Position numbers and translations under genes: made by a program
The notes under the pieces: model-generated
Told to the model about the DNA's origin: nothing
Databases searched by the model: none
Seen by the model: only the letters and a program-made list of their open reading frames with translations
DNA from: Marsupella aquatica
Taxonomy: Eukaryota > Plantae > Marchantiophyta
Length of the DNA stretch: 64,000 nucleotides
Assembly: GCA_973895155.1 (NCBI GenBank)
Contig: OZ316898.1
Coordinates: 5,195,079 to 5,259,078 of the forward strand
Reading direction: 5' to 3'
Shown here: positions 19,324-51,261 of the stretch, one piece after another
How positions within the stretch are numbered: the stretch's first letter is position 1
Layout: the number at the start of each line of letters is the position of its first letter

Positions 19324-22300
19324 ATGACAAGGAACGCACTTTGGGTGGATGGATGGTCAACTCCAGCCTGGGTTAAGGCAAGGGCTAATTTTATTACTCA
19401 CTGCAGATCTCAATCTCATGTCAGTTATTGCACGAGAGATTGGTCTCAAGTCACTGCAGAAAGAAATGGCAGTAGGCACATGCACAACGTTAGTACCATG
19501 CGTGAAACCATTGCGGTTTTGAAAGATCGTGTACAACGAGGCATTACTATAGACTCGTACACATATGTGAAAGTTCTGCAAATGTGCTTGCAAGAGAAAG
19601 ACCTTCCAGCAGCCAAGCAAATTCATGATTGCATCATCGCGAGTCGAATTGATAAGCATCCATATGTGGCCATCACGCTCTTAAATGTGTATATCAAATG
19701 CGGAGGATTGTCGTATGCACGTAGAGTTTTTGATCACCTTCAGAAGAAGAGTGTTATTACTTGGACCAACATGATTGCAGGATATGCTAAGAGTGATCAT
19801 GTTCAGTCTGCATTCGAACTTTTCAATCAAATGCGCCAAGAAGGCGTCCAGCCTAATGAGATCACATATCTGACCATCCTGAAAGGATGTGCCAGCCCAT
19901 TAGATCTAACATACGGAAAAGAAATTCATGAGCATATTCGACAGGCCGGCTTTGAATTGGACGTGCGTGTAGGGACTGCCCTCCTACAGATGTACGCAAA
20001 ATGTTGGGGCGTTCCCGAGGCAAGGAAAGTTTTTGAAAAGCTGACCAATCGAAATGTCATTACATGGAATGTTATGATTGGAGCATATGCAGAACGTGAT
20101 CATGGTCTGGAAGCATATCGACTGTTTCTTCAAATGAGACGGGAAGGTTTAGAACCAGATGCATTCACTTACGCGAGCATCCTGAATGCATCTGCAAGTG
20201 AGGGGGCTTTGGAATGGGTGAAGGACGTTCATGGCCAGGCTAGCGAAGCGGGAGCGGACTCGGATTTGCGTGTAGGCAATGCACTGGTTCACATGTATGC
20301 ACAGAGTGGCAGTATAGATGATGCCCGACTAGTGTTTGACAAAATTGAGAAACGCGATGTAGTCACATGGAATGTAATGATCGGTGGACTTGCACAACAT
20401 GGATGTGGGCATGAAGCATATCGACTGTTTCTTCAAATGAGACTTGAAGGATTCGAACCAAATGCAATCACTTTCCTGAGCATCCTGAATTCATCTGCAA
20501 GTGCAGGGGCTTTGGAATGGGTGAAGGAGATTCATGGCCATGCAACCAAAGCGGGACTGGAGTCAGATTTGCGCGTGGGCAATGCAATGATTCACATGTA
20601 TGCAAAGATTGGCAGTATAGATCACGCTCGACTGCTTTTTGACAGAATGGAGGAACGCGATAAAGTCACATGGAATGTAATGATCGGTGGACTTGCACAA
20701 CATGGATATGGGCAAGAAGCATATCGACTGTTTCTCCAAATGAGACTTGACGGCTTCGAACCGAATGCAATTACTTATCTGAGCATCCTGAATGCATCTG
20801 CAAGTTTGGGAGCTTTGGAGTTAGTGAAGGCCATTCATGGCCATGCTACCAAAGCGGGACTGGGGTCGAATTCGCGTGTGGCCAATGCAATGATCCACAT
20901 GTATGCAGAGAGTGGCAGTATAGATGATGCCCGACTTGTTTTTGACAAAATGGAGAAACGCGATGTAGTCACATGGAATGTAATGATCGGTGGACTTGCA
21001 CAACATGGATGTGGGCATGAAGCATATCGACTGTTTCTCCAAATGGGACTAGAAGGTTTGGAACCAGATGCATTCACTTACGTGAGCATCCTGAATGCAT
21101 CTGCAAGTGAGGGGGCTTTGGAATGGGTGAAGGACGTTCATCGCCAGGCGAGCATAGCGGGGTTGGAGTCAGATTTGCGTGTAGGCAATGCACTGGTTCA
21201 CATATATGCAGAGATTGGCAGGACAGATGATGCTCGACTAGTGTTCGACAAAATGGAGAAACGCGATGTAGTGACATGGAACGTACTGATCGGTGGACTT
21301 GCACAACATGGGTGTGGGCATGATGCATATCGACTGTTTCTCCAAATGAAACGTGACGGCTTCGAACCGAATGCAATTACTTATGTCAACATCCTGAATG
21401 CGTCTGCATGTGACGGGGCTTTGGAATGGGTGAAGGAAGTTCATAGCCATGCTAGCAAAGGAGGACTGGTGTCGGATTTGCGTGTGGGCTCTGCGCTGCT
21501 TCACATGTATGCAAAGAGTGGCAGTATAGACGATGCGAGACTGGTTTTTGACAGAATGACGAAACGCGATGTAGTCACATGGACTGCAATGATCGGTGGG
21601 CTTGCACAACATGGATGTGGGCAAGAAGCATATCAACTCTTTCTCCGAATGAGACTTGAAGGCTTCGAACCAAATGCAATCACTTATATGAGCATCCTGA
21701 ATGCGTCCGCAAGTGCCGGGGCTTTGGAGTGGGTGAAGGAGATTCATGGCCAGGCTAGGGAAGCGGGAGTGGAGTCAGATTTGCGCGTGGGCAATGCAAT
21801 TCTTCACATGTATGCCGAGAGTGGCAGTATAGATGACGCCCGACTGGTTTTTGATAGAATGGAGAAACGCGATGTAGTCACATGGAATGTAATGATCGGT
21901 GGACTTGCACAACATGGATTTGGGTATGAAGCCCTGGAAATCTTTAGAAAAATGACCGCTGACGGTGAGAAGCCCGACAATTACTCGTTCGTGGCAGTAT
22001 TGTCAGCCTGTTGTCACGGAGGCCTTGTAGATGAAGGCCGTAGACTCTTTTCAGCTATGACGCACGATTATGGGATCGAGCCCGATATCGTGCATTGTAC
22101 GTGCATGGTGGATCTTCTTGGGCGGGCTGGACTTTTGGAGGAAGCGAAGCTCTTCATTAGTGACATGCCAGTGGAACCAGATGAAGTAACTTGGCAAGCC
22201 TTGCTTGGGGCTTGTAGAACTTACGGTAATGTGGAGTTGGGCGAATTTGCCGCTAAAGAGCTTCTGGAGTTGGATCCCAATAATGCTGCTGCGTATGTGC

Positions 22301-22797
22301 TCCTCTCCAACATCTATGCTTCAGCTGGCAAATGGGAGAATAAGTCATTGGTACGCACCGTGATGCAAAAGAGACATGTTTGGAAGGTGCCAGGACGTAG
22401 CTGGATTGAAGTTGACAAGAAGATCCATACATTTGTTGTAGGGGATAGATCTCACCCAGAAGCGAAGGCAATATATACCGAGCTCAATAAATTGACTGGG
22501 AAACTGAAGGCTGAAGGCTATATTCCGGATACCCGACTTGTGTTGCATGATATTAATGAGGAGGATAAAGAACTAGCTCTTTGCTCTCATAGTGAGAAGT
22601 TGGCTATTGCTTACGGACTTATGCACATACCTCAGGGGAAACCAATTCGTGTATGGAAGAACCTTCGGGTGTGTTCAGATTGCCATACTGCAACCAAATT
22701 TATCTCGAAGGTGGCTGGACGCGAGATTATAGCCAGGGATGCTAATCGCTTTCACCATTTTAAAGATGGCATTTGTTCTTGTGGCGATTACTGGTGA
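19324..22797 (+). CDS. PLS-class pentatricopeptide repeat protein with E1-E2-DYW cytidine deaminase domain (candidate organellar C-to-U editing factor)
   Basis: 26 PPR motifs (L-S, 7 x P-L-S, P2-L2-S2), E1/E2, PG box PGRSWIE, HSEKLA, KNLRVCSDCH and terminal HHFKDGICSCGDYW. Confidence 0.97.
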   Translation: MTRNALWVDGWSTPAWVKARANFITHCRSQSHVSYCTRDWSQVTAERNGSRHMHNVSTMRETIAVLKDRVQRGITIDSYTYVKVLQMCLQEKDLPAAKQIHDCIIASRIDKHPYVAITLLNVYIKCGGLSYARRVFDHLQKKSVITWTNMIAGYAKSDHVQSAFELFNQMRQEGVQPNEITYLTILKGCASPLDLTYGKEIHEHIRQAGFELDVRVGTALLQMYAKCWGVPEARKVFEKLTNRNVITWNVMIGAYAERDHGLEAYRLFLQMRREGLEPDAFTYASILNASASEGALEWVKDVHGQASEAGADSDLRVGNALVHMYAQSGSIDDARLVFDKIEKRDVVTWNVMIGGLAQHGCGHEAYRLFLQMRLEGFEPNAITFLSILNSSASAGALEWVKEIHGHATKAGLESDLRVGNAMIHMYAKIGSIDHARLLFDRMEERDKVTWNVMIGGLAQHGYGQEAYRLFLQMRLDGFEPNAITYLSILNASASLGALELVKAIHGHATKAGLGSNSRVANAMIHMYAESGSIDDARLVFDKMEKRDVVTWNVMIGGLAQHGCGHEAYRLFLQMGLEGLEPDAFTYVSILNASASEGALEWVKDVHRQASIAGLESDLRVGNALVHIYAEIGRTDDARLVFDKMEKRDVVTWNVLIGGLAQHGCGHDAYRLFLQMKRDGFEPNAITYVNILNASACDGALEWVKEVHSHASKGGLVSDLRVGSALLHMYAKSGSIDDARLVFDRMTKRDVVTWTAMIGGLAQHGCGQEAYQLFLRMRLEGFEPNAITYMSILNASASAGALEWVKEIHGQAREAGVESDLRVGNAILHMYAESGSIDDARLVFDRMEKRDVVTWNVMIGGLAQHGFGYEALEIFRKMTADGEKPDNYSFVAVLSACCHGGLVDEGRRLFSAMTHDYGIEPDIVHCTCMVDLLGRAGLLEEAKLFISDMPVEPDEVTWQALLGACRTYGNVELGEFAAKELLELDPNNAAAYVLLSNIYASAGKWENKSLVRTVMQKRHVWKVPGRSWIEVDKKIHTFVVGDRSHPEAKAIYTELNKLTGKLKAEGYIPDTRLVLHDINEEDKELALCSHSEKLAIAYGLMHIPQGKPIRVWKNLRVCSDCHTATKFISKVAGREIIARDANRFHHFKDGICSCGDYW

Positions 22798-23299
22798 CCA
22801 GATCGAAAGGTGTGTCCAAAAGTTACTTGAAAGCAAAACTCAGTCATCCCGATTTGCCTTTCTGTTCCATGCTTGCCATTCGTTCTTCTGTTCATATTTG
22901 CCCATTTTTCTATTTGTTCCAATCTGTCCTCCCCAAGAAATGAGGGATGTCTTCAGTAGACAGATTCGCCAAACGGAATAAACGCAAATTCACTTCATAT
23001 CGATCTAAAGTGAAGAATAATTTTAAGCATATGTATTCAGTAAATTCCTTCTGTGCTATGGTAAATGAGAAGAACGAATGATGATATGCAATTACATAGG
23101 CTATAAGACATTCATCCACACAAAACCAATAGTACGGAAAAGCTCGAACATTTGATCTTCACTAAGCACATCAGTTGGAAATATTGACACACAAACTTAG
23201 TTCACTAGCTGGAGAAGGAAGTCGAATTCGAAAGACCCTGCCTCTGAGAAGCCAGGCCAAACTTCAATTTCTCTTGCAACGTAATCTGTAAATTTAATT

Positions 23300-23700
23300 G
23301 ACTTTAGTCCAATTTGCATGATTGCACTCGGCGATTGCACTGCAGAGCAGAATCACAACAATGCCACTGAGCAACGAGACTTGTTCGCCAGACAAGAAGT
23401 CGAGCAAATAAAGTCATATTCAGCAAGATCTCTTGCAGAAATCCCACAGTTCCAAAAAGTGCGAGAAGAGCAACATCGATACCCTGCAGCGAGCTACCGC
23501 ACTCTAAACTCAATGACATGCTGAAACGAATTCAGGAGGATTACACATATCAAGGATGGGAGACGCCAAGTCAAAAGCGCAGGCTCTGTGAGGTCTACAA
23601 CGCAATCTAGGGAGAAAACAGAGAGCGTCTGCCCATTCAACCGTGAACCTTAAAGAAATCCATTCACACTCTGCATTAAAGCTCTCGTGGAAGTGCTTTA
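23300..23700 (-). pseudogene. Possible degenerate cysteine-containing LRR (F-box/LRR-like) remnant
   Basis: Minus-strand peptide GQTLSVFSLDCVVDLTEPALL..VR*LAAGYR..FWNCGIS resembles LRR-CC repeats; many stops. Confidence 0.25.
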
Positions 23701-24059
23701 ATTCAAAAATGAAAACAGCTGATCTCTCTGTCACACTCGTCTCCCTCCCTCTCATTGTCCACTTTCTCTTTCGTTGTTGTTGCTTAGCAATGTGAAGCAA
23801 TCTTGGTCCAAAGTTTACCATCTCTTGGCAGATTTTCTAAGCTCAAGAAATCATTGATAAATCCACATTCCAGCATTGCCAGGCATCCAACGACGCTGGC
23901 AATTTATAAACACTGACGCAGCTTCAAGACATGAGTTCAACTCTCAGAAGTGCAGATGACTCGAATTAATACCTTTGCACAATTCCTCACTGTGGAGAAG
24001 TTAAATCCACACTGCAGCATGCCCAGGCACCCAAAGACTCGGACATAGGCGATCACAAA

Positions 24060-24640
24060 GTAGTGGTGTTGAACTCTTGGGTAAGACGGTCTTTAGGCCT
24101 CCCAATCAAAGGTTCAAATTTATTCAGGTAGAAGCTTTATGGGAAACTCATTTATCAGAACCTCTTAGATGTTGCCTGACCTGCTTGCTTGTATTTAAGT
24201 GATAAGAGAGTGGAGTGACCTCTAAATTGTCTAAGCAAGTGTCAAGTCTTTTTTCTGCAAAGGGCTTTAGTGAAACTCACTTTGGGATAGAGGTTCGTAC
24301 TAAAGTTGGTGAACCAGTGAGTTTTGAACTCGGAACCTCACTTGCCTCAATGAAGCTTGTTGGGAAGACTAATATCTAGCCAAAATGCATCCACACATTA
24401 GAGTTGGCGTTTGGAAATGTGAAGAAATACACCCTCATGTCTCGCCTTCAATCTGTGCGCAATGGGCAGCATTGAATGACAGGACCCAATAGGTAGCAAC
24501 ACATGATTTAGGTTCCAAGGAACACTCGTCCAAAATTGATTTCCCTCCAGTTAACTCACTAAGTATCTTGGAAACAGCAGAGCACTCCCACAGGTTCTCA
24601 CCAAACATCCCCACCAATGGGGATTCTAGCAAGCCGGTTT
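24060..24640. repeat. Dispersed repeat family A, copy 2 (same orientation as copy 1)
   Basis: Collinear diverged match to 15040-15640. The motif TTGGCTGTGTCCAACAACA also recurs at ~16089 and ~25452. Confidence 0.85.
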
Positions 24641-27600: not shown

Positions 27601-28043
27601 AGTAACAAGGGCCAAGATCTTGTTTCCATCATTCTACCAAGCTTAATTATAAGCCTTTCTTTCAATCAATAGCCTCCAAGAATGTAGATGTTCCAATTTG
27701 ATCAAAGCCACAGGCTCACTACGTACTGCTGCACAAAGAACACTCCAATGTCCAAGCTGGTCTATTCATTGAATTGATTTCTCTATCTTACTCAATTTGG
27801 CTCCCATCACTGTACGAGAATCAAAGATGTTCTGAGGGAGACCACCAGCAGCTAACATTTCCAAATGGCTCAGTTGGCTGAATCATTAGTGTACTTAACT
27901 TAGTGAGGTAATAGTTTTGGAGGCCTTGCAATTATATAGCATCTTCATATTGCATCCACGATGAGGAACTGTTCTAAGCTGCCTGCTAGACCGTGTCCCT
28001 TCAGATCGATCGAGACAAGTGCTGAACTCTTTGACAGATTGAT

Positions 28044-28847
28044 TCACTCCACATTCTTGGTGCCGGTAGCTTCAGTGGCGGCGACCCCTTGGGCAGGTTG
28101 ATCAGATTGAGCTTTAGTCGCGCGTTTTTGTTGATAAGCGAAACTCCTGCTGGCGTAAGTGAAGGAGACTGGAGAGACTGGGAATCCGATGCCATGTCTT
28201 GTTGAGGGAAAGGTAACAAAAAGCGCGCTGACAAAGAACCCAACCACAGCGGGAACGATCGTCACAACGTTCTCATCGATGTCAGGATAGAAGCAGGCAC
28301 GAATGTTGGAAGTCATGAGTGCACACGCCGAGAACACTGTCAGCGAAAGAATCGAGTGTATGACATCGATCCATGTCAACTTGTACTCCTCGTTGTCGCC
28401 CGGATGAAGCGCGCCGGGAAGCTGTGGAGTCCACAACCCATTGCAGGTGACCAGCCCGTAGTAGACCTTTCCATCTGCGGCTTGGTAGCTATCGGTGAAA
28501 CACGAGACGACACAGAACAATGCGAAGAAGGAGACCACCGCAATCGTGAGCCAAAATTCGAACGGATCGTCACATGCGCCATAGTCGGTAATGATCGGCG
28601 CGATTGCGGTGAAGGCCAAGAACGTTCCCGTGGGCAGAAGATTGGCCAGGTTAGATGCACCGCTGTATAGCCCATTCACGAGGGTAGCCCATGGGTTCGC
28701 TGCAGTGCTAGAACTCGCGTCTGCTACAGATGTTTCTGATGTCGAACTGGTATCGGTGCTCCGTGCAACCTCTCTCGGTACCAGAGGTTCCGTCTCTTGC
28801 GTAGAAGACGTCGGCAGTAACGTTTCTGTCAGTCGAGAGCTCGTCAT
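28044..28847 (-). CDS. DMP: DMP (DUF679) membrane protein
   Basis: LANLLPTGTFLAF, CFTDSY..DGKVYYGLVT.NGLW, YKL..ID.IH, CFYP and FPSTRHGIGFP, with four hydrophobic segments. First ATG is at 28847 (267 aa); the ORF-track start at 28985 is GTG. Confidence 0.93.
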   Translation of the reverse strand: MTSSRLTETLLPTSSTQETEPLVPREVARSTDTSSTSETSVADASSSTAANPWATLVNGLYSGASNLANLLPTGTFLAFTAIAPIITDYGACDDPFEFWLTIAVVSFFALFCVVSCFTDSYQAADGKVYYGLVTCNGLWTPQLPGALHPGDNEEYKLTWIDVIHSILSLTVFSACALMTSNIRACFYPDIDENVVTIVPAVVGFFVSALFVTFPSTRHGIGFPVSPVSFTYASRSFAYQQKRATKAQSDQPAQGVAATEATGTKNVE

Positions 28848-29811
28848 GATGTCCGGATTCCGTCTCTGCTTTAGATGCGTTGGTGCGATCTCAATTCTCA
28901 GATCCAAATTTCGCAATATGTAGATTTCCGAGAACACCAAGACGTAGAGGTTTGGATCTATCAATCCGACAGGATCTCCGACCACTTTAACGTGTGAAAC
29001 TTAAACTCTGCCGCTACCTAACGAGCCCACAAAAACATGTCGATCCGAGATGAGGCTCGCTCCTGGATTTAAGGTCTTCAACAACTTCGACGCTGTCAAC
29101 TCGAAGCAGAGCGGCCAAAGTATCTTTGACCTGAGCCAAACAGAAAAGCATTGTATTTCTGTGTCTGTCTGCCTAGCTTATTGCCCTAGCCCTCCAACCA
29201 CTAAAGCAATCCAGGAATCTATCTTCCAAGCTTGACGATGCCTGCACTCTTATTTCATCGACTTTTGACACGAGGAATATACGGACCGTTCTATCATGAT
29301 GTAGACTGAGAAGGAATCAACTTACTGCAGCGAGCTTTCGAAGGTTTCAGGGAAGGTGTACTTTGCATGACCAAGTAGAAATCCCGCTTTATCACTTTCC
29401 CCCTGAACAGACCAAGTGCGAAACAATATTGGCTGTCGACCCGGCCAAATCATGAACATTTTCGGAATGATGCGTCTCTGCAGGCTAGCTCGACACTGCA
29501 GCTCCATGTGTAGCGTATTGCCTTGATCCTCGGCCAGATTGATTGGGACAATCAAATCACTCAACACGAATGTCTCTCCCGAATCCCGAAGTGGTAATTC
29601 ATAATTCATCTTTTTGAGTCGACGCAATGTCCAAACGTGGGCAACCATTGCATGGTACTAACCCAGTTCTTCCGGCTCATGCCTCATGGCCGAGATGGTG
29701 TTTGCACATCTCATATGGAGTAACTGTAGCTAGCAGCTGGCTAGTATTCTGCTAGAGGATATGCTTTCGTTTTCAGTCGTCAGCGCTTCCATAGCATGCA
29801 AGCTCCTGTAG

Positions 29812-30224
29812 CAGATAATCTTTGTGCATCTTATTCACATTAACAGCTTCCCAAATAACATGGACCTTCTCGATCAACCACAGCTGTTGAGCTGTTGAAC
29901 ATCGGATAAGCTTTGGGCATCTTAATCACATTAACAGGTTCCCAAATAACATGGACCTTCTCAACCAGAGCTGTTGAACATCGGACAAAGTTTGTGCATC
30001 TTAATCACATTAACAGTTTCCCGAATAACTTGGACCTTCTCATGCAACCAGAGCTGTTGAATATCGGATAAACTTTGTGAGTCTTAATTACATTAACAGT
30101 TTCCCGAATAACATGGACCTTCTCAACCAGAGCTGTTGAACATCGGATAAACTTTGTGCATCTTAATCACATTAAGAGTTTCCCAAATAACATGGACCTT
30201 CTCAACCAGAGCTGTTGAACATCG
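29812..30224. repeat. Minisatellite, 5 x ~80 bp
   Basis: ATCGGATAAACTTTGTGCATCTTAATCACATTAACAGTTTCCCAAATAACATGGACCTTCTCAACCAGAGCTGTTGAAC units at ~29812, 29901, 29980, 30063 and 30142. Confidence 0.95.
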
Positions 30225-30689
30225 ACTCGATCTCGATAGGAACCGCAGATTGCTACTCACTGTTTGGTATATGTATATTGTGTGACGCCAAGCGAGCACA
30301 TGACCAGTACGCTGACTCCAAGATGGGCCAAATCCAGTGCGCAATCCGCTTTGCGACCCCTCAATCATGATTATTTCCTGTAACGTGCGTGTCGATCGAG
30401 ATGTCCCAGGCAATTTGTTGGCGTCAAGGCGGCTCCAAGGTGGCCCCCAGGAAACTTTAGAAACTGTCACACGATAGTAGTGCTCTTTGCAGTAGTACTG
30501 TGTACCAAGAGGCAAAACAGTGCCTATCGCCAAGCATTGTGACCCCAGGAGCCAACCTTAAAATTGCAACCATGCCACTGGACATTTGGGCCATCAAAAG
30601 ATTTAAGGAGACCCAAATACTCAAAGCAGCCATCGACCATGCATTGCACTATCTCCTAAAGTGGGGCTATTAAACCACAACTACCGGCT

Positions 30690-30890
30690 ATTGGTTACCT
30701 GTAGTTCTCATTATAAAGTGGACAGGTTCAACATGGGCTTGAGCTCCACAAAAGGTGGTGAGTGCTCCACCTTTTATTGGCAAGTGCTCCACCTTTATGG
30801 GGAGACACTATTCACCACAAGACACTAATGAGTGCTAGTGAAGGAGTGAATGGGACTTTTATATGGGCAGGTGTGGTTTAATGGACCTTA
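30690..30890. repeat. Unamplified homolog of the 16.1-16.6 kb arrays
   Basis: GGTTACC.GTAG.TCTCATTATAAAGTG.ACA.GTTCA, AAAAGGTGGTGAGTGC, ATTGGCAAGTGCTCCACCTTT and GAGACACTATTCAC occur in the same order. Confidence 0.8.
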
Positions 30891-31513: not shown

Positions 31514-31515
<2 letters not shown>

Positions 31516-41899: not shown

Positions 41900-42450
41900 G
41901 TGTAGTGAAAATGTGCCGCAAGCTCCCTATCAACTGTCTAGGTTGACAGAGAAGGTGCTCCAAAAGTGGACCATCGATGCAACTTTCAAAGCAGCAAATA
42001 ATTCTTCCTTCTATTGTATACCATCAGGATAAACTGCATCTCAATTTTCTGAATTTGACGGACAGCATTGTTGTACAAGTGGACCATGTATGCACCTTCC
42101 AGAACCGCAGTTATCAAGTATCATCAAACGTGTGCCGACCAGGGCACCCTCCATATCGACCATCTCAGTTGACAGAGGATAGGAATGCTCTACCGGTGGA
42201 CCATTAATGGAACTTATAGATCAGCCGATATCAAATATTGTCAGATGTACACACCATTCAGGGAGAACTCCAGGACAGCTATTTCAGCTGACAAACGGTA
42301 GAATTTCAACCCAGGTGCACCATTACTGGAACCTCCAGAACAGATACCGAATATCGCCAAATGGATTCGCCATGCTGGACAAACTCCATGTCAACTATTT
42401 GAGCTAACAGAGGGTAGAATTGCCAAACAGGGGGATCATTGATGCAATGA
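41900..42450 (-). repeat. Cryptic degenerate tandem repeat, ~5 x 113-119 bp
   Basis: Anchor motif (plus strand, GGA[C/T]CATT.ATG-like) at 41972, 42085, 42202, 42321 and 42437. Minus-strand peptides align: CINDPPVWQFYPLLAQIVDME / SSNGAPGLKFYRLSAEIAVLE / SINGPPVEHSYPLSTEMVDME. Confidence 0.65.
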
Positions 42451-44789
42451 AATTTCCAATGTGTTCCGTGGAACACAACCGAACCATGAGCTTCCAATGT
42501 CAGCCAGCCTGTGTTTAATTGCACGGCCTGAGATGTCTAGCTTTGCTGTGGTGAATAACCGAGCAGACTTTTTCAAACAGCCTCTCTTTGTCATTGTCAT
42601 CCAAACCACCAAAAGTCCTTCAACAGACTCGAAGTCACATCATCATTTGCTCCGATAGGACCATCCTGATGTTTGTGAGGACCATTTGAGACAAGATTTT
42701 CTTTCGGGGCAATCTCGACACGCTTGGAGGACAAGTAACCCCAACACCGGGGGAAAATCTTTCATAGGAAACGTGGGGAAATTGCCAGATACCTCTTGAT
42801 CCCGTGAGGGGGGCAACACAAACCAGATACAATCTATCAGGTCTACTTGCAACCACTGTTGCAATAAACCAGACATTTTTTCTTGAAACAAACTCCGCAG
42901 TAACCCCTCCGGAAGGGATTGACTCATGGAAGATTGCAATGAATAGATATTTTCTTCCGGCAAGCTCAGCAGTATACCAGCCTGGTAGCACTCATAGAGA
43001 CTTGCCTTTCAACAGCAGCTGTCACAAACAGACACCAGCGGCTCCTCCAATTAAGGTACAACCCCGCTACACAATCTTCAAATCAATCGAGACTTCCACC
43101 TCTTGAATCGGCTTCAGTAGGCAATTGAGTCCAAACCGAGTAGTAAGAATACCAACACGTCGCCCTGTCAACCCGGTTGAAACATAACTGCTGGCGAATC
43201 CAGTCAACCCTCCTAAGCAATAAATCCCTCGATTCCGTCGAGCGATCGTTCCGAACCCCTCTCTTCCTCCACACTGAATCGAGAACAGAGTGAGACAGAC
43301 AACCTTCAGTAAACCAGCAAATCTAACCCAGTTCAGGAGAGGAGCACTGGCGTGGCGAATTGCCAATTTGTCCCAGCACGAAAGCATGATCTGCACGCAA
43401 CATCTCATACGGGCATGCAACAACGACTATGCCAAACAAGCCGGTCTCGCGACCTAGACTGTATCTAAAGCATCAGATATACAAGCTATTTTACCAATAC
43501 TACAGGACAAAGGTGCCCGTCACTGACGAGGCATACACGAGATGCAATTGGGTCTGTTACACTGCAGCGCAAGGCCTAGCCCGCTCACCAGACGCACCAC
43601 AACACAGGACAAATTGTTCGCCACATCTCGAGGGACTGTCGAGACACTACGACATCTACCCAACTAGGACAAGACGCCTGGATTTTCGTCAAGAACTACT
43701 GAGACTGAACTATCACTTCGTCCTCACTTCTTTGACACCACTTCTCAGACACAGCTATATTCCACGACAGGACGCTCAGGGCAAAGGCGAACACAGACCT
43801 CAAATTAAAGTACAGGATAGACGACGACTTAGGGATACTCTCCAAATCGCTAGGATTTCGCTCACATCATGAAAAGTATCACATCGAACTAGAACAAAAC
43901 TGCAATTTCGTGCCTCCTTCAGCTTGTTCTCAGAGTTTGAGACTCAAAGTAGCGAAACTAAGAACAATGGAATTGGGTTTCGTAAAACTTCAACGCCATC
44001 TTCGCTCCACCTCCAAAGGCAGTAGCAATCTTCACCAGACCACACGGGTGCAGCAGCAGCGCAGATGCGGCATCCTGCGGGACCATCATCGTCGACAGTC
44101 TCAGGCGAGGAACTCCTCGAACGACCGTTCATCGAGACACAAAAGAAGAAACGTATTCTTCTAGATGCAAGATAAGTCTACAACTCCTGTAAACCCAAAC
44201 AGACTCGGTATGAAAGCACCAAAGTACTTAAAGCTTCCTCCTTCACGCACACAAAAAGGCGCGCCGGCGTCAGAGAGACAAGGAGAAGACAGAGCGAGAG
44301 AGAGCAACTACAATAAATGAAGTATTCTTGTGGCAGTCCAAAAGTCCACAACCGACAGAGAAGCCAGAACACGAATCGGCTGACGCGCCACACAAGAAAT
44401 GACTTTGGACAACGAGTGGATCACCTCAGAGAGACACAGAGAGCTTTGGTAAAAGGAGCAACGGGGAGAGCGAGAGCCGAGGGAAGGGACTGAAAGGAAG
44501 CACGGCACATGAACGAAGAATCAACGAAAGGACGCTATCCCAAACGGACGATGGTTCACGACAACAAACGAAGATGAACTCGGAGAAAGAGCAAAGTAGT
44601 GAAAGTGAAAAGAACGCGGGAGACCGGGAGAGCAAGAAAAGAGGGATGGAGGGAACTTCGGAAGGAAGGAAGGAAAAAATTTCGTGCAGTAGACTCTAGA
44701 GAAAACGAAAACGAAAACGAGGGAGGGAAGGAAAACTCTTCGTTACTCTCCGACAAAGACGAACACAGAACCAGTGACGCCACTGCATG

Positions 44790-45215
44790 GAACGACGCCA
44801 ATTCCACTTCCGGGGGCCTGATCACGAGACAGAAGAAGGAGGAGGAGGAGGCAAGAGCCCAAGAGACTGATCACCCACGAGGTCGAGAAACCGAGAAAGG
44901 CATTACAATTTACGTGCGAGGGACCGAACATGAAGGACGCCAATTCCAATTCCGGGAACAGAAGAAAGAGGCAGAGGAGGAGGCAAGAGCGCAAGAGACT
45001 GATCCCAGATGAGGTCGAGCGGAGAAACGGAGACAGGCTTTACAATAATTATGTGCGAGGGACCGAATGTAACGCACGCCAATTCTAATTCCGCCATTCC
45101 GGGGACCTCGATCACGAGAGAGAAGGAAGAAGAGGAGGAGGCAAGAGCGCAAGAGACTGATCACTGATGAGGTCGAGCAGAGAAACGGAGAAACAGAGAG
45201 GGACCGAATGTGACA
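44790..45215. repeat. GA-rich diverged tandem repeat, ~3 x 130-160 bp
   Basis: GAGGAGGAGGCAAGAGC[C/G]CAAGAGACTGATC..GAGGTCGAG..GAGGGACCGAA at ~44842, ~44974 and ~45132. Confidence 0.85.
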
Positions 45216-45739
45216 ACAGCAGAGGAGACCAGAATCAAGAAAGGGAAGTCGGCGACAAAACGAGGGCTCTCGTCTTTGGACAAGACGAAGACGAGGGTAC
45301 TGAGGGAACTGAGGGAACCGGAGGGCCGTTGGATTGGGAGAGAGGGAACTGACGGAACCGGAGGACCTTTGGATTCGGCATTGGGAACAGAGGGAACGGG
45401 AGGACCGTTGGATTGGGACGGGACAGGACAGGACAGGACGAAGAGGACAAGAGACGTGCGGTTCTGGCCTTGAAACAACCAATGACCTCATACAAGGGGG
45501 ACGTGTCCCAAAACTTCTTATTTTTCTTGAAAGGGGCACTTTACTTGCAAGAAAAGTAAAACCCATTAAACACCAGAGTAATATGGTCAGACCACATGAG
45601 GGCAAGGACCAAAAGTCACCCAGAGGCCAAACACATTAGCCCCGAGTACAGGGGTACAAATGGGAAAAGAAAGAAAGAAAAGAAAAGAAAGGTGCAAATA
45701 TGAGGGCCAACTCAACCCCAAAGCAAAACAACTTTATTA

Positions 45740-46780
45740 ATACGCGGGGTAGCAATCAAGGAGGCTTGGATATGGGTTCCAAATGTTTTTTTATTGCGTA
45801 CAGATGCTACTAGAAGCACATGATACATTGATGGTTGGACATAATGGAGTGGCAAAACCATGAAACAACTGCAAAGCAAATATTGATGATTGATCATATG
45901 TGATTTGAGATGTCTAGACATATGTTCATAGTTAAGTGTTTAGTTTGCCAGCAAAATAAATCTTCTAATCAGAAATAGATAGGTCTTCTCCAACCACTCC
46001 CCATACCGGAATGACGATGAAAACATGTTTTGATGTATCTAGTCATATCATATGTGTTAAATTATGACGTCTTCCTTCATGACGATCCAATCAGTATTCA
46101 TTCTATGCACACGTAGTCGACACAATCTCTACGTGGTTCACCTCTTCTCTAAGACTATGTCCTCACGAACACTCAAACTTTATTCAAGAGTAGACGAACA
46201 CACATGCTCTCCCTCTTCCTCTAGTTGCTCCGTTACAATGAGTAAGTAACCCACACCAACAGTTTACATTAGCTCTGGTATATACAAGATCACACACGAT
46301 TAATCTAACCTCAGCTAAGACTCTAACTATAGTTAACCTAATTGTCGTAACCTATGAATAATAAGACTAAGAACAATCCTTAACAATATGATCTACAACC
46401 AAGGACATAATGTTATTGTTGTCTTTGTGAATAAACTCACCAAGATTATACATATTTAACCCACATTAGATATGATAATTGCTCCAAAGGTAGTACAACA
46501 CTTTCTTGTAATAGAGTTTGCTCAACATGGGATGTGTACTACATCAACTTCAAATCAAGGCAAACAGTTCACAAGTTAAGTCTCTTTTGAAAAAGCTTAT
46601 TTAGGTCTGTTAAAACCAAGTTAGCTATTTTTTACTAAGGTCTATTACTCTAAAGATGGATGGTCAAACCAGATGTGCCAATCAAACTATCGAGAAGATA
46701 CTATGAGCATATATACTTGATCAGCAAACAGAGTGGGATCTTGCCTTACCCTTGGTTGAGTTTGCTTACAAAAATCTGCT
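45740..46780 (+). mobile_element. Degenerate Ty3/gypsy integrase fragment
   Basis: EAHDT..GHNG..KT, CLVCQQNK, GLLQPLPIPE, IVVFVNKLTK, DGQTRCANQTIE.IL and EWDLALPLVEFAY motifs, with stops and frameshifts; split by a solo LTR. Confidence 0.9.
46055..46385. mobile_element. Solo LTR related to the copia LTRs at 52.4/58.8 kb
   Basis: TGTTA...TAACA termini and a perfect 5-bp TSD ATATG (46050-46054, 46386-46390). Shares TAGTCGACACA, TACGTGGTTCACCTC and GCTCCGT.ACAATGAG with the copia LTRs. Confidence 0.9.
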
Positions 46781-47196
46781 CACCCAGATGAATTCTCGAT
46801 TCGTTCAACTGTGCCATAGGAAATGGAAGGTTACTCCAGTTCCTATGTGCACTACGGACCCTCCTGTCCTACTAGTTAATTGCTGAATTATTCCCGGATA
46901 CATTCGATTATGCAGTAAGTTCCCCAGTTCCGAAGATTCGGTCCACCGCCGGTAGATTTTATCCACTAAGCCGATTGTACACTCGCTGCAAGACATAGTG
47001 GTATTGTACTAACTAGGTAGCATGTGAGGAAGTAGTGTTCACCACTTCACACTCTCAAATTACAGCGTTGGAGGTGAACTGTAAATCTCCGCTCCTTTGT
47101 ACTATGTTTGATATGAGAACTCTCGACCCCGAGCGTTTGTCCTTAACGCAATTAGCAGGCAGATGCTCTTTTGTTGGTCTGATTTTGAGATTGCAG

Positions 47197-47495
47197 AATT
47201 CAAGCAACTGGTGCGAAATTGTGAACCGAAGGATATTAGGTTTGGAGCCGAGTCGAGGGCTCTTATACTCCAAGGTGTCGAGCAACTTTCAGATGCTGTG
47301 AAGTTTACCATGGGCCCGAAGGTATAGAAGAGAGCTGTTTAACGTAATTGTTGTCTGCCACTTATAAAATTATGTTTAGATGTCGTAGGTATGTGACATC
47401 CTTGAACTACTCACTAATTGCTTTGTGAATCGTACTCTTTTCCAGGGTCGAGGTGTGTTTATTGAGGAAAGTTTTGGTTCTCCTAAAACCACGAG
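47197..47495 (+). pseudogene. HSP60: Mitochondrial-type chaperonin-60 N-terminal gene fragment (two exons)
   Basis: Exon 47197-47321 encodes ..[36 protein letters not shown] intron follows, then an exon from 47446 (GRGVFIEESFGSPK). Homology stops there. Confidence 0.85.
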
Positions 47496-48558
47496 TTCCT
47501 GTATAAAGTACTTCGGTTAACCCGTAGTACTCCTTTCAAATATAGTACAATTGTATGTGCGAGAGAGCATGGATATGATGAAGTAAGAGGTGTGTGACTT
47601 TTCTATCTCTACGCTACAAATGATTTCATCATGTTCTGTAATGATTACGGAAATGCAGCGAGCCGGTACAGCACTGGCATGGTTGAATTAATAAAGCAAT
47701 TACAGTCGATGAATTAGTTGTGGCCCCATTCAAGCGGTGTGGTTGGTGTAAAATTTAGAAGGATTCGGCTTTCACTATAATTGTAAAACAAATTCTGGGG
47801 TGACTGGAGCTGTGCAAACCATGCAGAAGCGTTGGAGAAAAGGACTCCAATGCGAACAGGCGGAATTCCTCGTAGCGAGAAGTGAAAACCCTTAGAAGAG
47901 AGCTCAAAGATGTCCTAGTTGGTTGGATTTCTTCAATGAGAACGGATCCTTTGGGGAGTTATCCCTACCCTTGGTTTGATGTGGAACTCTTGTATTATGC
48001 CTATCAGTGGATTGTTCTCGTATCTTGTTTGAGGGTTTAGGGTTTAGAGTTTAAACCCTAAGATGTGGCCAACCCTGTCATCATTGATCGAGTGATCACC
48101 GAGTTGCCAGACAATGATTACCCTGCATTTCCATACCGCCAGGACTGCAAAGGGTATTGGAATGTGAATGAGCACATAGAATTCTAGCTAAGCTACCTGG
48201 ATATGTCTTTCACACTTATTTCGGTATTCTATTCTAAGACCATTGCACTCTGACAGACAGCCGTTACTCTCAATTGAGACTAAGTTATATCACTTTTGCA
48301 AGTTTTGCGTACCATATATCGCAGCATAGAAAGGGAGACAAGAAAGCATGTCTCTGGACGGAGGTATTGTCCTAGCCCCAGAATTAGGGACTTACCGGTG
48401 TGCTATCTTTTTGTGAGCGTAGTATTGTAGACATATGGTCTTGACTTCAGAAACCCAAAAAGTAATTCATTGCACCTCGTGGAATCGCTTGCTGTCGATC
48501 TGATCGTGGGTTGTGGGGACCATCGATGAAGCCCAGAGCACCTGAGTTTAATCATAAG

Positions 48559-51261
48559 ATGAGAAGGAAAGCACTTTGGGTGGATGGCTGCTCTACTCCA
48601 GCATGGGTGAAGGCAAGGCTCGGATTGCTTACTCAAGGCAGATTGCAATCTTGTGCATATGGAACTGTGGGCTCCGTCATCCGGCAGATGTCTGGCGTGG
48701 CCAAAGTTTACAACCCGTCCCTGCAGCAGGCGTAGAACGAGCTCGACGCATTTCGTGATCAATGGAGGCTTCAGAAGACGGCTGCCAAGGTGTACGGGAG
48801 GGAAGTTCAATCAGCAGAGTCTGAAAACAGAGGGGAAGCTGAAGCTCTGGCTGGTTTTCAAGGTGTAAAGGGGCATGGCAACAATGTAGCACAGCTGGAG
48901 GCACCATCCCCTCAAACTCGCCCAGGAGCTCCCAAGTGGAGTGAAGCTGCAAAGATGATCGAGCACAAGCGGAACCTTTCACGTACAGTCGTTGGTGGGA
49001 TTGAATTCCGTCAACAGAACACTGACAGCCTGCAAGTGGAACTCGAAGGAGCAGGTGATACAAAAGCGAAATTAACCAGACCTATAGCAGCGAACAGTTT
49101 GCAGGGGACTCAAGAGCCGGAACTTCTATCCAGGAAGCAAGAGGAGCAATCTTCAGCTATCTTTGAAGAACGGGTGACTGGGGAATTAGGACGTCAACAC
49201 CTGATGACCGAGGAGCTGTTCAGGAAAGCACATTGGATGGATGGCCGGTCAAGACCAGCGTGTATAAGGGAAGGGCTCGATTTGATTGGTCAAGGCGGAT
49301 TGCGATCTCGTGCCTATTGTGGCAGAAGAGATTGGTCTCGAAACATTGCACAAGAGAATGACAATACGGACATGCAGAGCGCGGGGACCGCGAGTCAAGC
49401 AATTACTGTGGTGCAGAATCGTCTACAACGAAGCATTACTACAGACTCGTACACATATGTTAAAGTTCTGCAAATGTGCTCGAAACAGAAAGACCTTTTA
49501 GCGGCCAAGCAGGTGCATGACCACGTCATCCCGAGTGGAATGGATAATAATCTTTCTGTGGCGATAGCCCTCCTGAATGCGTATATTAAATATCGAGCAT
49601 TGCTCGATGCACGCCGAGTTTTTGACCAACTTGAGAAGAAGAGTGTCATTACTTGGAACAACATGATTGGAGGATATTGTAAGAGCGATCATACTGAATC
49701 TGCTTTAGAGCTATTTAATCAAATGCGCCAAGAAGGCGTGCAGCCGGACGAGATCACGTATCTGAGCATCCTAAAGGCATGTGACAACAACCCATTAGCT
49801 CTAAAATGGGGAAAGGAAGTTCATGTCCATATTCGACATACTGGCTTTGAATCAGATGTGCGGGTAGGGACTGCCCTCCTACAGATGTATGCAAAGAGGG
49901 GCAGTATCGATGACGCCCGACTAATGTTTAACAGAATGGAGAAACGTGATGTAGTGACATGGACTGCAATGCTTAGAGCATATGCAGAAGGTGGTCATGG
50001 TGTGGAAGCATATCAACTGTTCCTCCAAATGAGACGGGAAGGCTTCGAACCAGATGCAATCACTTATCTGAGCATCCTGAATGCATCTGCAAGTGCGGGG
50101 GCTTTGGAGTGGGTGAAGGATGTTCATGGCCATGCTAGCGAAGCTGGACTGGAGTCGGATTTGCGTGTGGGATTTGCGTGTGGGATTTGCGTGTGGGATT
50201 TGCGTGTGGGCAATGCACTGGTTCACATGTATGCAAAGAGTGGCAGTATAGATGATGCCCGACTGGTCTTTGACAGGATGGAGAAATGCGATGTGGTCAC
50301 ATGGACTGCAATGATCGGTGGACTTGCACAGCATGGATGTGGGCATGAAGCCCTGGAGTTTTTCAGGAAAATGAATGCAGACGGTGTGAAGCCCGATCGG
50401 ACTTCATTCGTGGCAGTGTTGTCCGCCCGTTGTCATGGAGGCCTTGTTGATGATGGCCGTAGAATCTTTTTGGCTATGACGCAAGATTATGACATTGAGC
50501 CTGACGTTGTGCATTATACCTGCATGGTGGATCTTCTTGGGCGGGCGGGACACCTGGAAGAAGCAAAGCGGTTCATTAGTGACATGCCAGTTGAACCAGA
50601 TGTAGTAACTTGGAAAGCTTTGCTTGGGGCTAGTAGAACGTATAACAATGTGGAGTTGGGCGAACTTGCCGCTAAACAGCTTCTGAAGTTGGAACCCAAT
50701 TGTGCGTCTGCATATGTGCTTCTCTCCAACATCTATGCTGCAGCTGGTAACTGGGAGAAGAAGTCCTTGGTCCGCACCATGATGCAAGAGAGAGGTATTC
50801 GGAAGGAGCAAGGGCGGAGCTGGATTGAAGTTGATAGCAAGGTCCATGAATTTGTCGTGGGGGATACATCTCATCCAGAAGCGAAGGCGATATATACTGA
50901 GCTCAATAAATCGAATGAAAAACTGAAAGATGAAGGCTACATTCCGGATACCCGACTGGTGTTTCATGATATGAATGAGGAGGAAAAAGAACTAGCTCTT
51001 TTCTCTCATAGTGAGAAGTTGGCTATTGCGTACGGGCTTATGCATATACCTCTGGGAGAATCAATTCGTGTGACTAAGAACCTTCGAGTGTGTCCAGATT
51101 GCCATACAGCAACGAAGTTGATCTCTAAGGTGACAGGACTTGAGATTATAGCGAGAGATGCAAATCGCTTTCACCATTTTAAAGGTGGGGTGTGTATTGT
51201 GGTGACTACTGGTGACCAGTTGAATTTGTTGCGGTGGCTGGAAATTGGTTCTGAACGGTAA
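48559..51261 (+). pseudogene. Second PLS-DYW PPR paralog, probably decaying (11 PPR motifs, E1-E2, frameshifted DYW tail)
   Basis: ATG 48559 is homologous to the 19324 start and in frame with the 48790-51261 ORF, but TAG lies at 48733; later ATGs are at 48955 and 49204. HSEKLA and CPDCH are retained and the PG box reads QGRSWIE. There is a 39-bp insertion at 50158-50209. A 1-bp deletion at ~51196 moves CGDYW* (stop 51213-51215) out of frame. Confidence 0.88.
50158..50209 (+). repeat. 4 x 13-bp perfect microrepeat inside the PPR coding sequence
   Basis: GATTTGCGTGTGG at 50158, 50171, 50184 and 50197; single-copy in the homologous motifs of the first PPR gene. Confidence 0.97.

What the first reader, a model, noticed from the sequence alone, without database searches (positions are those of the whole stretch)
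19324..51261. Paralogous DYW-PPR editor pair with different array length and rewritten RNA-recognition code
Seen: two genes share upstream noncoding DNA (~18920-19320 vs ~48190-48560), the first PPR motifs and E/DYW domains, but carry 26 vs 11 motifs. At equivalent motifs the 5th/last residues differ: first P TN vs ND, next S TN vs TD, second P ND vs TD, P2 ND vs TD. The scaffold stays similar. Established: these residue pairs set base preference (TN=A, TD=G, ND=U, NN=C/U). Inference: this is a birth-and-death system that makes new RNA editors by adding or deleting 303-bp P-L-S modules and changing code residues. From memory the scaffold resembles the moss PPR_43/PPR_45 type, so it may be a lineage-specific expansion.
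Basis: partly seen in the sequence, partly recalled or inferred. Interest (0 to 1): 0.8.

Follow-up and report, generated by a model that had tools for sequence, protein, structure and literature searches.

The report
Old liverwort RNA-editor gene pair

Summary
Their 5' DNA is 73% alike.

Three points change the reading:
- They are not recent sister copies. Their dS is 0.45, against 0.42 for UreF between this genome and Calypogeia fissa. Trees leave them in a polytomy with 20 Calypogeia paralogs.
- Gene 2 is damaged. A 1-nt deletion removes the final SCGDYW, including a zinc-ligand Cys whose loss abolishes editing in moss PPR56. A perfect 13-bp x4 microsatellite adds 13 residues to an S motif. 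Seven otherwise invariant residues are changed.
- The "shared non-coding upstream DNA" is a family-wide 5' exon, an intron and the start of the main exon. It encodes an OSB-type PDF motif (profile E 1.5e-17 to Amborella OSB3).

Across 22 liverwort family members, code positions vary more than scaffold positions (p 0.001). Arrays differ by whole 101-residue P-L-S triplets. So birth-and-death holds for the family, as is already known for PPR genes.

The organism is a leafy liverwort, not Sphagnum. First-stage notes on other windows of this genome had already flagged the PDF motif.

The parts
18107..18153 (+). Gene 1, proposed exon 1 (ATG 18107, MEILDMDPFRQHSTA.), donor GT at 18154
   Evidence: Homology to exon 1 of the Calypogeia P0066 model (L003 4001-4120) and a phase-consistent GT..AG. 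This is a model by homology with no RNA evidence.
18247..18314 (+). Gene 1, proposed exon 2 (.VHPTSSGLIGIGISHCSGTSAS.), acceptor AG 18245-18246, donor GTAATG at 18315
   Evidence: Matches P0066 exon 2 and P0059 residues 142-165.
18991..19097 (+).
   Evidence: tblastn matches to the N-terminal coding sequence of Calypogeia P0041, P0013 and P0066. Acceptor TTGACAG| and donor |GTAGGC are present. Exons 1, 2 and A total 222 nt, which is in frame.
19098..19290 (+). Gene 1 intron, two codons before P-R-A-P of the PDF motif
   Evidence: GT..AG is present. An intron sits at the same place in Calypogeia P0066 (L003 4595-4789) and in the moss Ceratodon P0049 (L007 1447-1593).
19291..22797 (+). Gene 1 main exon: PDF motif, 26 PPR motifs, E1, E2, E+ and an intact DYW deaminase.
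   Evidence: Pfam finds PPR, E_motif, Eplus_motif and DYW_deaminase 1-93/93. HSE, CSDCH, HHF and CSCGDYW are all present.
19291..19470 (+). Gene 1 PDF motif, second half and tail (RKPRAPEFNHRMTRNALWVDGWSTPAWVKAR...)
   Evidence: Local profile score 117.8 bits. The profile hits OSB3 at E 1.5e-17 library-wide. This sequence alone scores 54.6 bits against OSB3.
20110..21932 (+). Six tandem 303-bp P1-L1-S1 units in gene 1 (units 2-7)
   Evidence: TRF gives period 303, 6.0 copies, 84% match. Units 3-7 are 83-89% identical, with mean dS 0.32.
48191..48651 (+). Gene 2 block shared with gene 1: exon A-like 48256-48363, intron-like spacer, start of the PDF exon
   Evidence: blastn gives 72.8% to 18925-19416. 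The same block is 69% identical to the DNA upstream of Calypogeia P0048. No exon 1 or exon 2 homologs lie within 4 kb upstream.
48529..48669 (+). Gene 2 PDF motif copy 1 (KPRAPEFNHKMRRKALWVDGCSTPAWVKARL...)
   Evidence: Profile score 97.8 bits and 63.9 bits against OSB3.
48733..48735 (+). In-frame TAG between PDF copy 1 and the rest of gene 2
   Evidence: It is either a lesion or intronic. The Calypogeia P0066 model has an intron at this place, whereas the P0084 model reads through.
48739..49023 (+). Segment absent from gene 1 and shared only with Calypogeia P0084
   Evidence: tblastn gives 52.6% identity, E 1e-20. blastn gives 73% to L002 4639-4885. It is the only hit among 120 homologs.
49213..49353 (+). 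Gene 2 degenerate second PDF-like copy (LFRKAHWMDGRSRPACIREGL...)
   Evidence: Profile score 39.1 bits, E 1e-10.
49204..51261 (+). Gene 2 PPR body: 11 motifs, E1, E2, E+ and a DYW domain with a frameshifted end
   Evidence: Against gene 1, dN/dS is 0.24-0.36.
50157..50208 (+). (GGATTTGCGTGTG)x4 perfect microsatellite. Three surplus copies add 13 residues at the start of motif S1-2.
   Evidence: TRF finds 100% match. Gene 1 has a single copy, GGATTTGCGTGTA.
51193..51215 (+). Site of the 1-nt deletion, with the out-of-frame remnant YCGDYW*
   Evidence: Alignment and frame check. 117 of 120 homologs end in CSCxxxW.

Best explanation
The window comes from the nuclear genome of a leafy (jungermanniid) liverwort. 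Both genes belong to a family of PLS-class DYW pentatricopeptide-repeat proteins that has expanded in liverworts and mosses. These proteins are the site-specificity factors, with a built-in cytidine deaminase, for C-to-U RNA editing in mitochondria and chloroplasts.

Gene 1 is intact. Its 26-motif array should bind about 26 nucleotides 5' of a target C, with S2 opposite position -4. By the PPR code it reads nnAnAUnUYnUYnUUnUYnGAnUUnG-nnn-C. Its DYW domain keeps every catalytic and zinc-binding residue.

Three small exons lead into an N-terminal OSB-type PDF motif, which is interrupted by a conserved intron.

Gene 2 is an old paralog, and the split is about as old as the split from the Calypogeia lineage. 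It has two triplets and a different code, nnUnGGnUGnG-nnn-C. It was under purifying selection for most of its history. It now carries fresh lesions: loss of the terminal SCGDYW by a 1-nt deletion, a 13-residue microsatellite insertion, several hits to invariant residues, and no homologs of the first two exons. It is most likely a recently inactivated copy.

Across the family, arrays change by whole 101-residue P1-L1-S1 triplets and code residues turn over faster than scaffold residues. This is the known birth-and-death mode of PPR editing factors.

Shown here: domain content, lesions, divergence values, family patterns and PDF homology. Inferred: organelle targeting, editing activity, the RNA targets, the exact exon model and the inactivity of gene 2.
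For: Organism:
- UreF (7649-8566, minus strand) is 85% identical to Calypogeia fissa, 65% to Marchantia and 52% to Ceratodon.
- Both PPR genes sit in a 100/99 clade with 20 Calypogeia proteins.

Domains and code.

Age of the split:
- dS between the genes is 0.45 in the C-terminal part and 0.46 in the N-terminal PPR block, with dN/dS 0.24-0.36.
- UreF dS between the two species is 0.42, and dS to Calypogeia paralogs is 0.36-0.59.
- The internal units of gene 1 have mean dS 0.32 and form a star with the Calypogeia units.

Gene 2 lesions:
- document them.
- 117 of 120 homologs end in CSCxxxW.
- In PPR56, C130A and C132A abolish editing, and P2A in the PG box has a strong effect (PMC10482289).
- A three-taxon split of the distances gives omega 0.20 on the gene 2 branch and 0.28 on the gene 1 branch, so gene 2 has had no long neutral phase.

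Family patterns.

5' structure and PDF motif.
Against: - There is no RNA evidence for expression, splicing or editing.
- The organelle genomes of this species are not available, so no target could be matched.
- The 1-nt deletion could be an assembly error. It lies in a GTGTGT context, and without it gene 2 would end in CYCGDYW.
- The 13-residue insertion lies at a motif boundary and keeps the frame, so it might be tolerated.
- Gene 2 keeps a 685-codon open frame and shows no raised dN/dS.
- The Calypogeia gene models used as guides are automatic predictions and disagree with each other in the 5' region. For example, P0059 reads through what P0066 splices.
- Signals on who is closest to whom conflict. 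Gene 2 shares a 5' segment only with P0084, yet unit 1 of gene 1 groups with P0084 and P0051. This points to mosaic evolution or gene conversion.
Confidence: 0.75

Rival explanations
1. One reading: gene 2 is a working, newly specialised editor. It was made from a gene 1-like copy by deleting 303-bp modules and changing code residues. The C-terminal frameshift is an assembly error or is tolerated.
For: - The frame is open for 823 codons.
- dN/dS is 0.24-0.36 and omega on the gene 2 branch is not raised.
- The microsatellite has exactly the copy number that keeps the frame.
- HSE and CxDCH are intact.
- Arrays of 11 motifs are within the range of known editors (own knowledge).
Against: - The second Cys of the CxC zinc site and the DYW end are lost. 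The equivalent C132A kills PPR56, and 117 of 120 relatives keep CSCxxxW.
- Seven hits to otherwise invariant columns, against none in gene 1.
- PG-box P is changed to Q.
- No homologs of exons 1-2 lie upstream.
- The split from gene 1 is as old as the species split, so gene 2 is not 'new'.
- The units of gene 1 are not a recent burst from which gene 2 could have been trimmed.
Confidence: 0.2
2. Gene 2 survives as a deaminase-dead RNA-binding protein. It would act as a specificity or stabilising factor that works with another DYW protein in trans, as E-class and truncated editing factors do in flowering plants.
For: The PPR array and the E1/E2 motifs are largely intact and were under constraint. 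Separation of RNA recognition from the DYW domain is documented in angiosperms (PMC10482289 introduction).
Against: - The lesions also hit the array (13-residue insertion) and conserved L2 and E1 residues.
- The microsatellite copies are 100% identical, so the damage is very recent and not a settled state.
- Trans-acting DYW helpers are not known to me in bryophytes (own knowledge, not tested here).
Confidence: 0.07
3. The two genes are a recent local duplication, and the similarity of their 5' flanks reflects that. The high coding divergence would come from accelerated evolution after duplication.
For: The genes lie 29 kb apart on the same strand. Their 5' DNA is 72.8% identical. Sisterhood is not rejected by the AU test, p 0.31.
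Against: - Synonymous divergence of 0.45 equals the between-species value of 0.42, and synonymous sites should not be accelerated by selection on the protein.
- The same 5' block is 69% identical to Calypogeia loci and is also conserved in mosses at protein level.
- There is no similarity beyond the stop codon or further upstream.
- The unit 1 tree excludes gene 2 from a clade of gene 1 plus Calypogeia units at 99/95.
Confidence: 0.1

Closest known systems
DYW-type PLS-class PPR RNA-editing factors of bryophytes, such as Physcomitrium patens PpPPR_45, PpPPR_56 and PpPPR_65
   Same: - The modular layout is the same. PpPPR_43 and PpPPR_45 are listed as L1-S1-(P1-L1-S1)6-P2-L2-S2-E1-E2-DYW in PMC9459714.
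- The DYW landmarks match: PG box, HSE, CxDCH, HxxxxxxCxC and the DYW end.
- RNA recognition uses the same 5th/last residue code.
   Different: - Gene 1 has 7 triplets, the longest in its liverwort clade, and gene 2 has 2.
- The family is much larger here than the 10 DYW genes of Physcomitrium.
- The genes carry an N-terminal PDF motif and small 5' exons.
- The one Physcomitrium protein among the hits (P0056) did not match the PDF profile at the cut-off used.
- I could not map P0056 to a PpPPR number, so orthology to PPR_43 or PPR_45 is untested.
Calypogeia fissa DYW-PPR paralogs (unnamed proteins P0013, P0041, P0048, P0051, P0066, P0084 and others)
   Same: - They share a 100/99-supported clade with both window genes.
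- C-terminal identity is 76-80% and dS is 0.36-0.59.
- The three triplet types are the same.
- The 5' exons and the intron are the same.
- P0084 shares the extra 5' segment of gene 2.
   Different: - They come from a different species (UreF is 85% identical).
- They have 3-6 triplets.
- One-to-one orthology is not resolved.
- None of the four loci inspected has the gene 2 frameshift.
[quoted passage not shown]
   Same: The N-terminal module of both genes is homologous to the PDF motif, (P.EWWDNR..K)NPxxPDFKHKxTGEALWxxxxxxPxWV. The profile hits Amborella OSB3 at E 1.5e-17, and it hits SSB-domain proteins with 2-7 motif copies.
   Different: - There is no OB/SSB domain.
- The motif sits N-terminal to a PPR array instead of C-terminal to an OB fold.
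- The liverwort version is degenerate (PEFNH in place of PDFKHK, and a weak first half).
- The motif is split by an intron.
- Its role here (RNA or DNA binding, or nucleoid tethering) is unknown.
Birth-and-death and diversifying evolution of PPR genes (restorer-of-fertility-like P-class PPRs, and the expansion of editing factors with editing-site number)
   Same: Paralogs differ most at the base-specifying residues, and copy number and array length are fluid. In liverworts, PLS-class PPR diversity correlates with the number of editing sites (PMC6865856).
   Different: Here the unit of length change is a whole P-L-S triplet of 101 residues. The amplified units are old (dS about 0.3), not recent.

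Membership tests
PLS-class DYW PPR editing factor | Tandem P-L-S triplets of 35/35-36/31-residue PPR motifs ending in P2-L2-S2 | tested here: met
   Motif tables for both genes and Pfam PPR families.
PLS-class DYW PPR editing factor | E1/E2 (and E+) motifs between the array and the DYW domain | tested here: met
   Pfam E_motif at 3.8e-21 and 2.1e-18, and Eplus_motif, in both genes.
PLS-class DYW PPR editing factor | Deaminase centre HxE...CxxCH | tested here: met
   HSEK, and CSDCH in gene 1 or CPDCH in gene 2. Pfam DYW_deaminase matches both.
PLS-class DYW PPR editing factor | C-terminal second zinc site (H...CxC) and the terminal DYW | tested here: not met
   Met in gene 1 (HHFKDGICSCGDYW). 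Not met in gene 2: the frameshift after the first Cys gives CIVVTTG.... The feature therefore fails for gene 2 only.
PLS-class DYW PPR editing factor | Site-specific C-to-U editing of an organellar transcript | not testable with these tools
   No organelle genome or RNA data for this species are available here.
Recent sister paralogs (local duplicates) | The genes are each other's closest relatives, with divergence below the between-species level | tested here: not met
   The tree is a polytomy and the AU test gives p 0.31. The unit 1 tree excludes gene 2 at 99/95. dS is 0.45 against 0.42 for UreF between species.
OSB-type PDF motif | Sequence homology to the roughly 50-residue PDF motif that is repeated C-terminal to the OB fold of OSB proteins | tested here: met
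   Profile search: OSB3 of Amborella at E 1.5e-17 with 4 stretches, and SSB-domain proteins with repeated matches. The window sequences alone score 54.6 and 63.9 bits.
OSB-type PDF motif | Binding of single-stranded nucleic acid | not testable with these tools
   Reported for the AtOSB1 PDF motif in PMC6963530. Not tested for the PPR-borne motif.
Physcomitrium PpPPR_43/PpPPR_45 orthogroup | Orthology to Pp3c3_24770 or Pp3c11_7720 | not tested
   Only the motif layout could be compared. The single Physcomitrium hit, P0056, lies in the moss sister clade and could not be assigned a PpPPR number.

The most novel reading that the evidence does not exclude
A lineage of PLS/DYW editing-factor genes shared by liverworts, mosses and lycophytes carries an N-terminal OSB-type PDF motif. 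This is a single-stranded-nucleic-acid-binding motif so far described only in organellar ssDNA-binding proteins. In these genes it is split by an intron at a matching place in a moss and in liverworts. The motif would give these editors a second, code-independent grip on nucleic acid, or tether them to the organelle nucleoid. Its repeated truncation or loss in paralogs, and its duplication in gene 2, would be part of the family's diversification. I found no paper describing this architecture.
Probability: 0.5. Interest if true: 0.6.

Novelty: new member of a known kind. Interest (0 to 1): 0.38.

Why it matters
The pair itself adds two members, one probably dying, to a well-understood gene family. 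It illustrates known rules: triplet-wise change of array length and fast turnover of base-specifying residues.

The work has three uses:
- It corrects the gene models.
- It gives a genome-level view of the DYW family in a leafy liverwort. A recent kingdom-wide survey sampled only four liverwort genomes and found PLS-class genes rare in them (PMC13386178).
- It provides a tested link between editing factors and the PDF motif of organellar ssDNA-binding proteins. That link suggests a simple experiment on how long PPR editors engage their substrates.

Tried and rejected
- Sphagnum origin, stated in an earlier follow-up note, is rejected. UreF and both PPR trees point to a relative of Calypogeia.
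- A "recent" amplification of the 303-bp units is rejected. The units have dS 0.22-0.44 and do not form a gene-specific clade.
- Pfam and the ESM Atlas gave nothing for the N-terminal module. Only the full HMMER profile search identified it.
- Synteny with Calypogeia around UreF could not be judged. The fetched locus L005 ends just short of where gene 1 would lie, and its neighbours differ.
- Two Ceratodon loci (P0003, P0052) were not on record.
- A clean outgroup test for relaxed selection on gene 2 was not possible because the family tree is a polytomy. The three-taxon estimate is rough.
The exons were compared one by one, by reference.
- I ran no structure or complex prediction, because no claim here rests on one.
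- Target prediction was not attempted, because no organelle sequence of this species is at hand.

Full report
**What is there**

The window holds two long open frames on the + strand, at 19324-22797 (1157 codons) and 48790-51261. Both are PLS-class PPR proteins with E, E+ and DYW deaminase domains (Pfam).

Gene 1 has L1-S1, seven P1-L1-S1 triplets and P2-L2-S2, which makes 26 motifs. Gene 2, counted from ATG 49204, has L1-S1, two triplets and P2-L2-S2, which makes 11 motifs.

Tandem Repeats Finder reports a 303-bp period with 6.0 copies at 20110-21932. The 5' flanks align at 18925-19416 against 48191-48651, with 72.8% identity. Similarity stops right after the stop codons.

**Whose genome**

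A single-exon UreF gene at 7649-8566 (minus strand) is 85% identical to Calypogeia fissa, 65% to Marchantia paleacea and 52% to the moss Ceratodon.

In trees of the C-terminal 301 residues (119 proteins), the N-terminal five motifs and both parts joined, the two genes fall in a clade with 20 Calypogeia fissa proteins. That clade has 100/99 support in the last two trees. Moss sequences form the sister group.

The window is therefore from a leafy liverwort related to, but not identical with, Calypogeia. Non-marchantiid liverworts edit organellar RNA, and the number of sites correlates with PLS-class PPR diversity (PMC6865856).

**Are they sister copies?**

Within the liverwort clade the two genes sit in a polytomy. 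Forcing them together costs 3.07 log-likelihood units, with AU p 0.31. Sisterhood is therefore neither shown nor rejected by the protein data.

The paths between the two genes (0.49) are as long as the paths to Calypogeia P0051, P0084, P0013 and P0041 (0.44-0.48). Synonymous divergence between the genes is 0.45 in the C-terminal part and 0.46 in the N-terminal PPR block. UreF gives dS 0.42 between the two species, and the window genes are at dS 0.36-0.59 from four Calypogeia paralogs.

In a DNA tree of single triplets, rooted on the other triplet types, unit 1 of gene 1 groups with unit 1 of P0066, P0084 and P0051 at 99/95 support and excludes unit 1 of gene 2. Gene 2 also shares a 285-nt 5' segment (48739-49023) with P0084 alone among 120 homologs.

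The split is thus about as old as the species split or older. The conflicting signals suggest some mosaic history.

**The repeated units**

Three triplet types exist and all predate the species split. The first is a first-triplet type. The second is an "AYAE" type, seen in unit 2 of both genes, which are 88% identical. The third is a "GGLAQHG" type.

Units 3-7 of gene 1 belong to the third type. They are 83-89% identical to each other, with mean dS 0.32 and range 0.22-0.44. They form a star with the Calypogeia units instead of a clade of their own. The long array of gene 1 is therefore not a recent burst.

Across 117 homologs, the span between the first S1 and P2 lies within 3 residues of a multiple of 101 for most. 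One moss group is offset by 22-23 residues. Triplet counts are 3-13 overall and 3-6 in Calypogeia. Gene 1 (7) and gene 2 (2) are the extremes of the liverwort clade. Protein lengths among the hits step by 101 residues, for example 824, 925, 1026, 1127 and 1228.

**Code against scaffold**

For the pair alone, code positions differ at 5 of 16 sites and other positions at 70 of 254 (Fisher p 0.78). Restricted to P and S motifs the counts are 4 of 10 against 39 of 154 (p 0.29).

Across the 22 liverwort members the picture differs. Mean pairwise difference is 0.55 at positions 5 and last of P and S motifs, against 0.29 at scaffold positions (Mann-Whitney p 0.001). This test does not correct for relatedness, so it is descriptive. 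The family pattern fits what is known for PPR proteins.

**Gene 2 is damaged**

- Relative to gene 1 and to all four Calypogeia loci checked, one nucleotide is missing after the Cys codon at 51193-51195. The present frame reads CIVVTTGDQ... and runs on to 51261, while YCGDYW and a stop are still readable one frame over.
- 117 of 120 homologs end in CSCxxxW.
- In Physcomitrium PPR56, replacing either Cys of this pair (C130A, C132A) or the His ligand abolishes editing at both targets (PMC10482289). Gene 2 has lost the second Cys.
- A perfect (GGATTTGCGTGTG)x4 lies at 50157-50208, where gene 1 has one copy. It adds 13 residues at the start of the last S1 motif. The perfect copies indicate a very recent event.
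- Gene 2 departs from seven columns that are invariant in all 25 other sequences. These include C to F before SHSE, R to L in GREII, C to R in L2 and C to S in E1. Gene 1 departs from none.
- The PG-box Pro is Gln in gene 2. P2A has a strong effect in PPR56.
- Homologs of the first two 5' exons are absent within 4 kb upstream.
- An in-frame TAG at 48733 separates the first PDF motif from the rest. It may be intronic: the P0066 model has an intron at this place, while the P0084 model reads through.

Against a long-dead pseudogene, the frame is open for 823 codons and dN/dS is 0.24-0.36. A three-taxon split of the distances gives omega 0.20 for the gene 2 branch and 0.28 for the gene 1 branch.

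My reading is a gene that was functional until recently and is now inactivated. An assembly error at the 1-nt deletion remains the main alternative.

**The "non-coding" upstream DNA**

tblastn with the N-termini of Calypogeia proteins hits the shared block in both genes. Two pieces match. The first is ...SRYSQLKRSRITIASYLYQRSQRSKGDKKIRLWTE at 18993-19097, with its gene 2 counterpart at 48256-48363.

The same block is 69% identical at DNA level to the regions upstream of Calypogeia P0048 and P0066. That is almost as close as the two window genes are to each other.

The P0066 model has four short 5' exons, of which three lie upstream of the PDF-motif exon. Gene 1 has matching pieces for those three, each with GT..AG and consistent phases:
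- exon 1, 18107-18153, starting with ATG
- exon 2, 18247-18314
- exon A, 18991-19097
- main exon, from 19291

This predicts an 85-residue N-terminal extension. I compared these exons one by one, by reference, and did not join them. The joined protein was neither searched nor folded.

**The module is a PDF motif**

The module is also conserved in mosses. Ceratodon P0049 reads ...PSQWWDNRNRK|intron|GNPRAPDFKHKVTGEALWIDGWYTPEWVK, and its intron lies two codons before P-R-A-P, as in the liverwort genes.

Pfam and the ESM Atlas found nothing for the module. First-stage notes on other windows of this genome had suggested an OSB "PDF" motif in PPR-DYW genes, so I tested that.

I built a profile from five module sequences (A3) and searched it against 1.84 billion representatives. 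It gave 194 hits at E 0.001 or better. Many hits are 250-750-residue proteins with 2-7 matches in their C-terminal halves. Examples include:
- Amborella "protein OSB3, chloroplastic/mitochondrial", E 1.5e-17, four matches, with a Pfam SSB domain at residues 98-185
- other proteins with an SSB domain plus repeated motif matches
- a Ceratopteris cluster, one of whose members is named single-stranded DNA-binding protein

The matched stretches show the PDF signature ...P.EWWDNR..K NPxxPDFKHKxTGEALW......PxWV. The window sequences alone score 54.6 and 63.9 bits against OSB3.

The PDF motif is the part of AtOSB1 reported to be sufficient for ssDNA binding (PMC6963530).

**Spread of the PDF-PPR combination**

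The same profile finds PLS or DYW PPR proteins with one to three N-terminal PDF motifs in the lycophyte Diphasiastrum. In the window it also finds a degenerate second copy in gene 2 at 49213-49353. Only 15 of the 120 annotated homologs carry the motif at the cut-offs used. One reason is truncation or loss in paralogs. Another is that gene callers miss it: in locus L001 it lies 360 nt upstream of the called start.

I found no paper that combines PDF or OSB with PPR or DYW in this sense. The library is incomplete, so this is not proof of novelty.

**How it most likely works**

Gene 1 should be made as a precursor with an N-terminal presequence and PDF motif, and then imported into an organelle. 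It should bind an RNA stretch of about 26 nucleotides through its array, with S2 opposite position -4. It should deaminate the C four nucleotides downstream.

All of this is inferred from family knowledge. The domain content and the residues are shown. The PDF motif may add non-specific single-strand binding, but that is speculative.

Gene 2 most likely no longer edits.

**Verdict**

The pair is old, not a fresh duplicate. One member is decaying, and the shared "non-coding" DNA is coding. The one feature that may be new is the PDF-PPR-DYW architecture, which this scan had already flagged on other DNA of the same genome and which I tested here.

Noticed in passing
window 52415-59110 (- strand): A copia-type LTR retrotransposon lies 1.2 kb downstream of gene 2. 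It has gag, integrase and RT ORFs at 53440-57115. Its 300-nt LTRs at 52415-52714 and 58811-59110 are 95% identical.
   Followed up: partly
L001:9462-9638 and ENA hits P0001-P0120: Unnamed ENA assembly contigs hold two very large, very young moss-like DYW-PPR families. One has 18 and the other 56 of the listed hits, with branch lengths of about 0.02. Protein lengths step by 101 residues. The PDF module lies upstream of the called gene start, so prokaryote-style gene calls truncate these proteins.
   Followed up: partly
proteins P0303, P0328, P0349, P0377, P0390 (Diphasiastrum complanatum); P0264 (Logan assembly): Lycophyte PLS and DYW PPR proteins carry one to three N-terminal PDF motifs. The PDF-PPR combination is therefore not confined to bryophytes.
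   Followed up: partly
proteins P0241 (Effrenium voratum), P0244 (Sanguina aurantia): The PDF profile's best hit is a dinoflagellate protein with 7 motif copies (E 8e-43). A snow-alga MAG protein has 5 copies. The motif is thus repeated in proteins well outside land plants.
   Followed up: no
window 19252-19290 vs 19065-19097: The end of the gene 1 intron (TRSDRRLWS*Q) resembles the end of exon A (KGDKKIRLWTE). Calypogeia P0059 is annotated as reading through the equivalent stretch. This is either an old internal duplication or a shifted splice site. The automatic models disagree here.
   Followed up: no
window 28044-28985 (-), 29820-30224, 44000-46000: Three unrelated features: a DUF679 (DMP-type) membrane protein ORF; a 79/162-bp tandem repeat just beside it; and a strongly purine-skewed block (AT skew 0.40) with a 40-bp tandem repeat at 45302-45419 inside a 231-codon ORF with no Pfam match.
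   Followed up: no
window 11787-13088 (+): A GC-rich 433-codon ORF with no significant Pfam match. In Calypogeia, the gene at the comparable distance from UreF is a Kinase-PPPase gene, so local synteny is not obvious.
   Followed up: no
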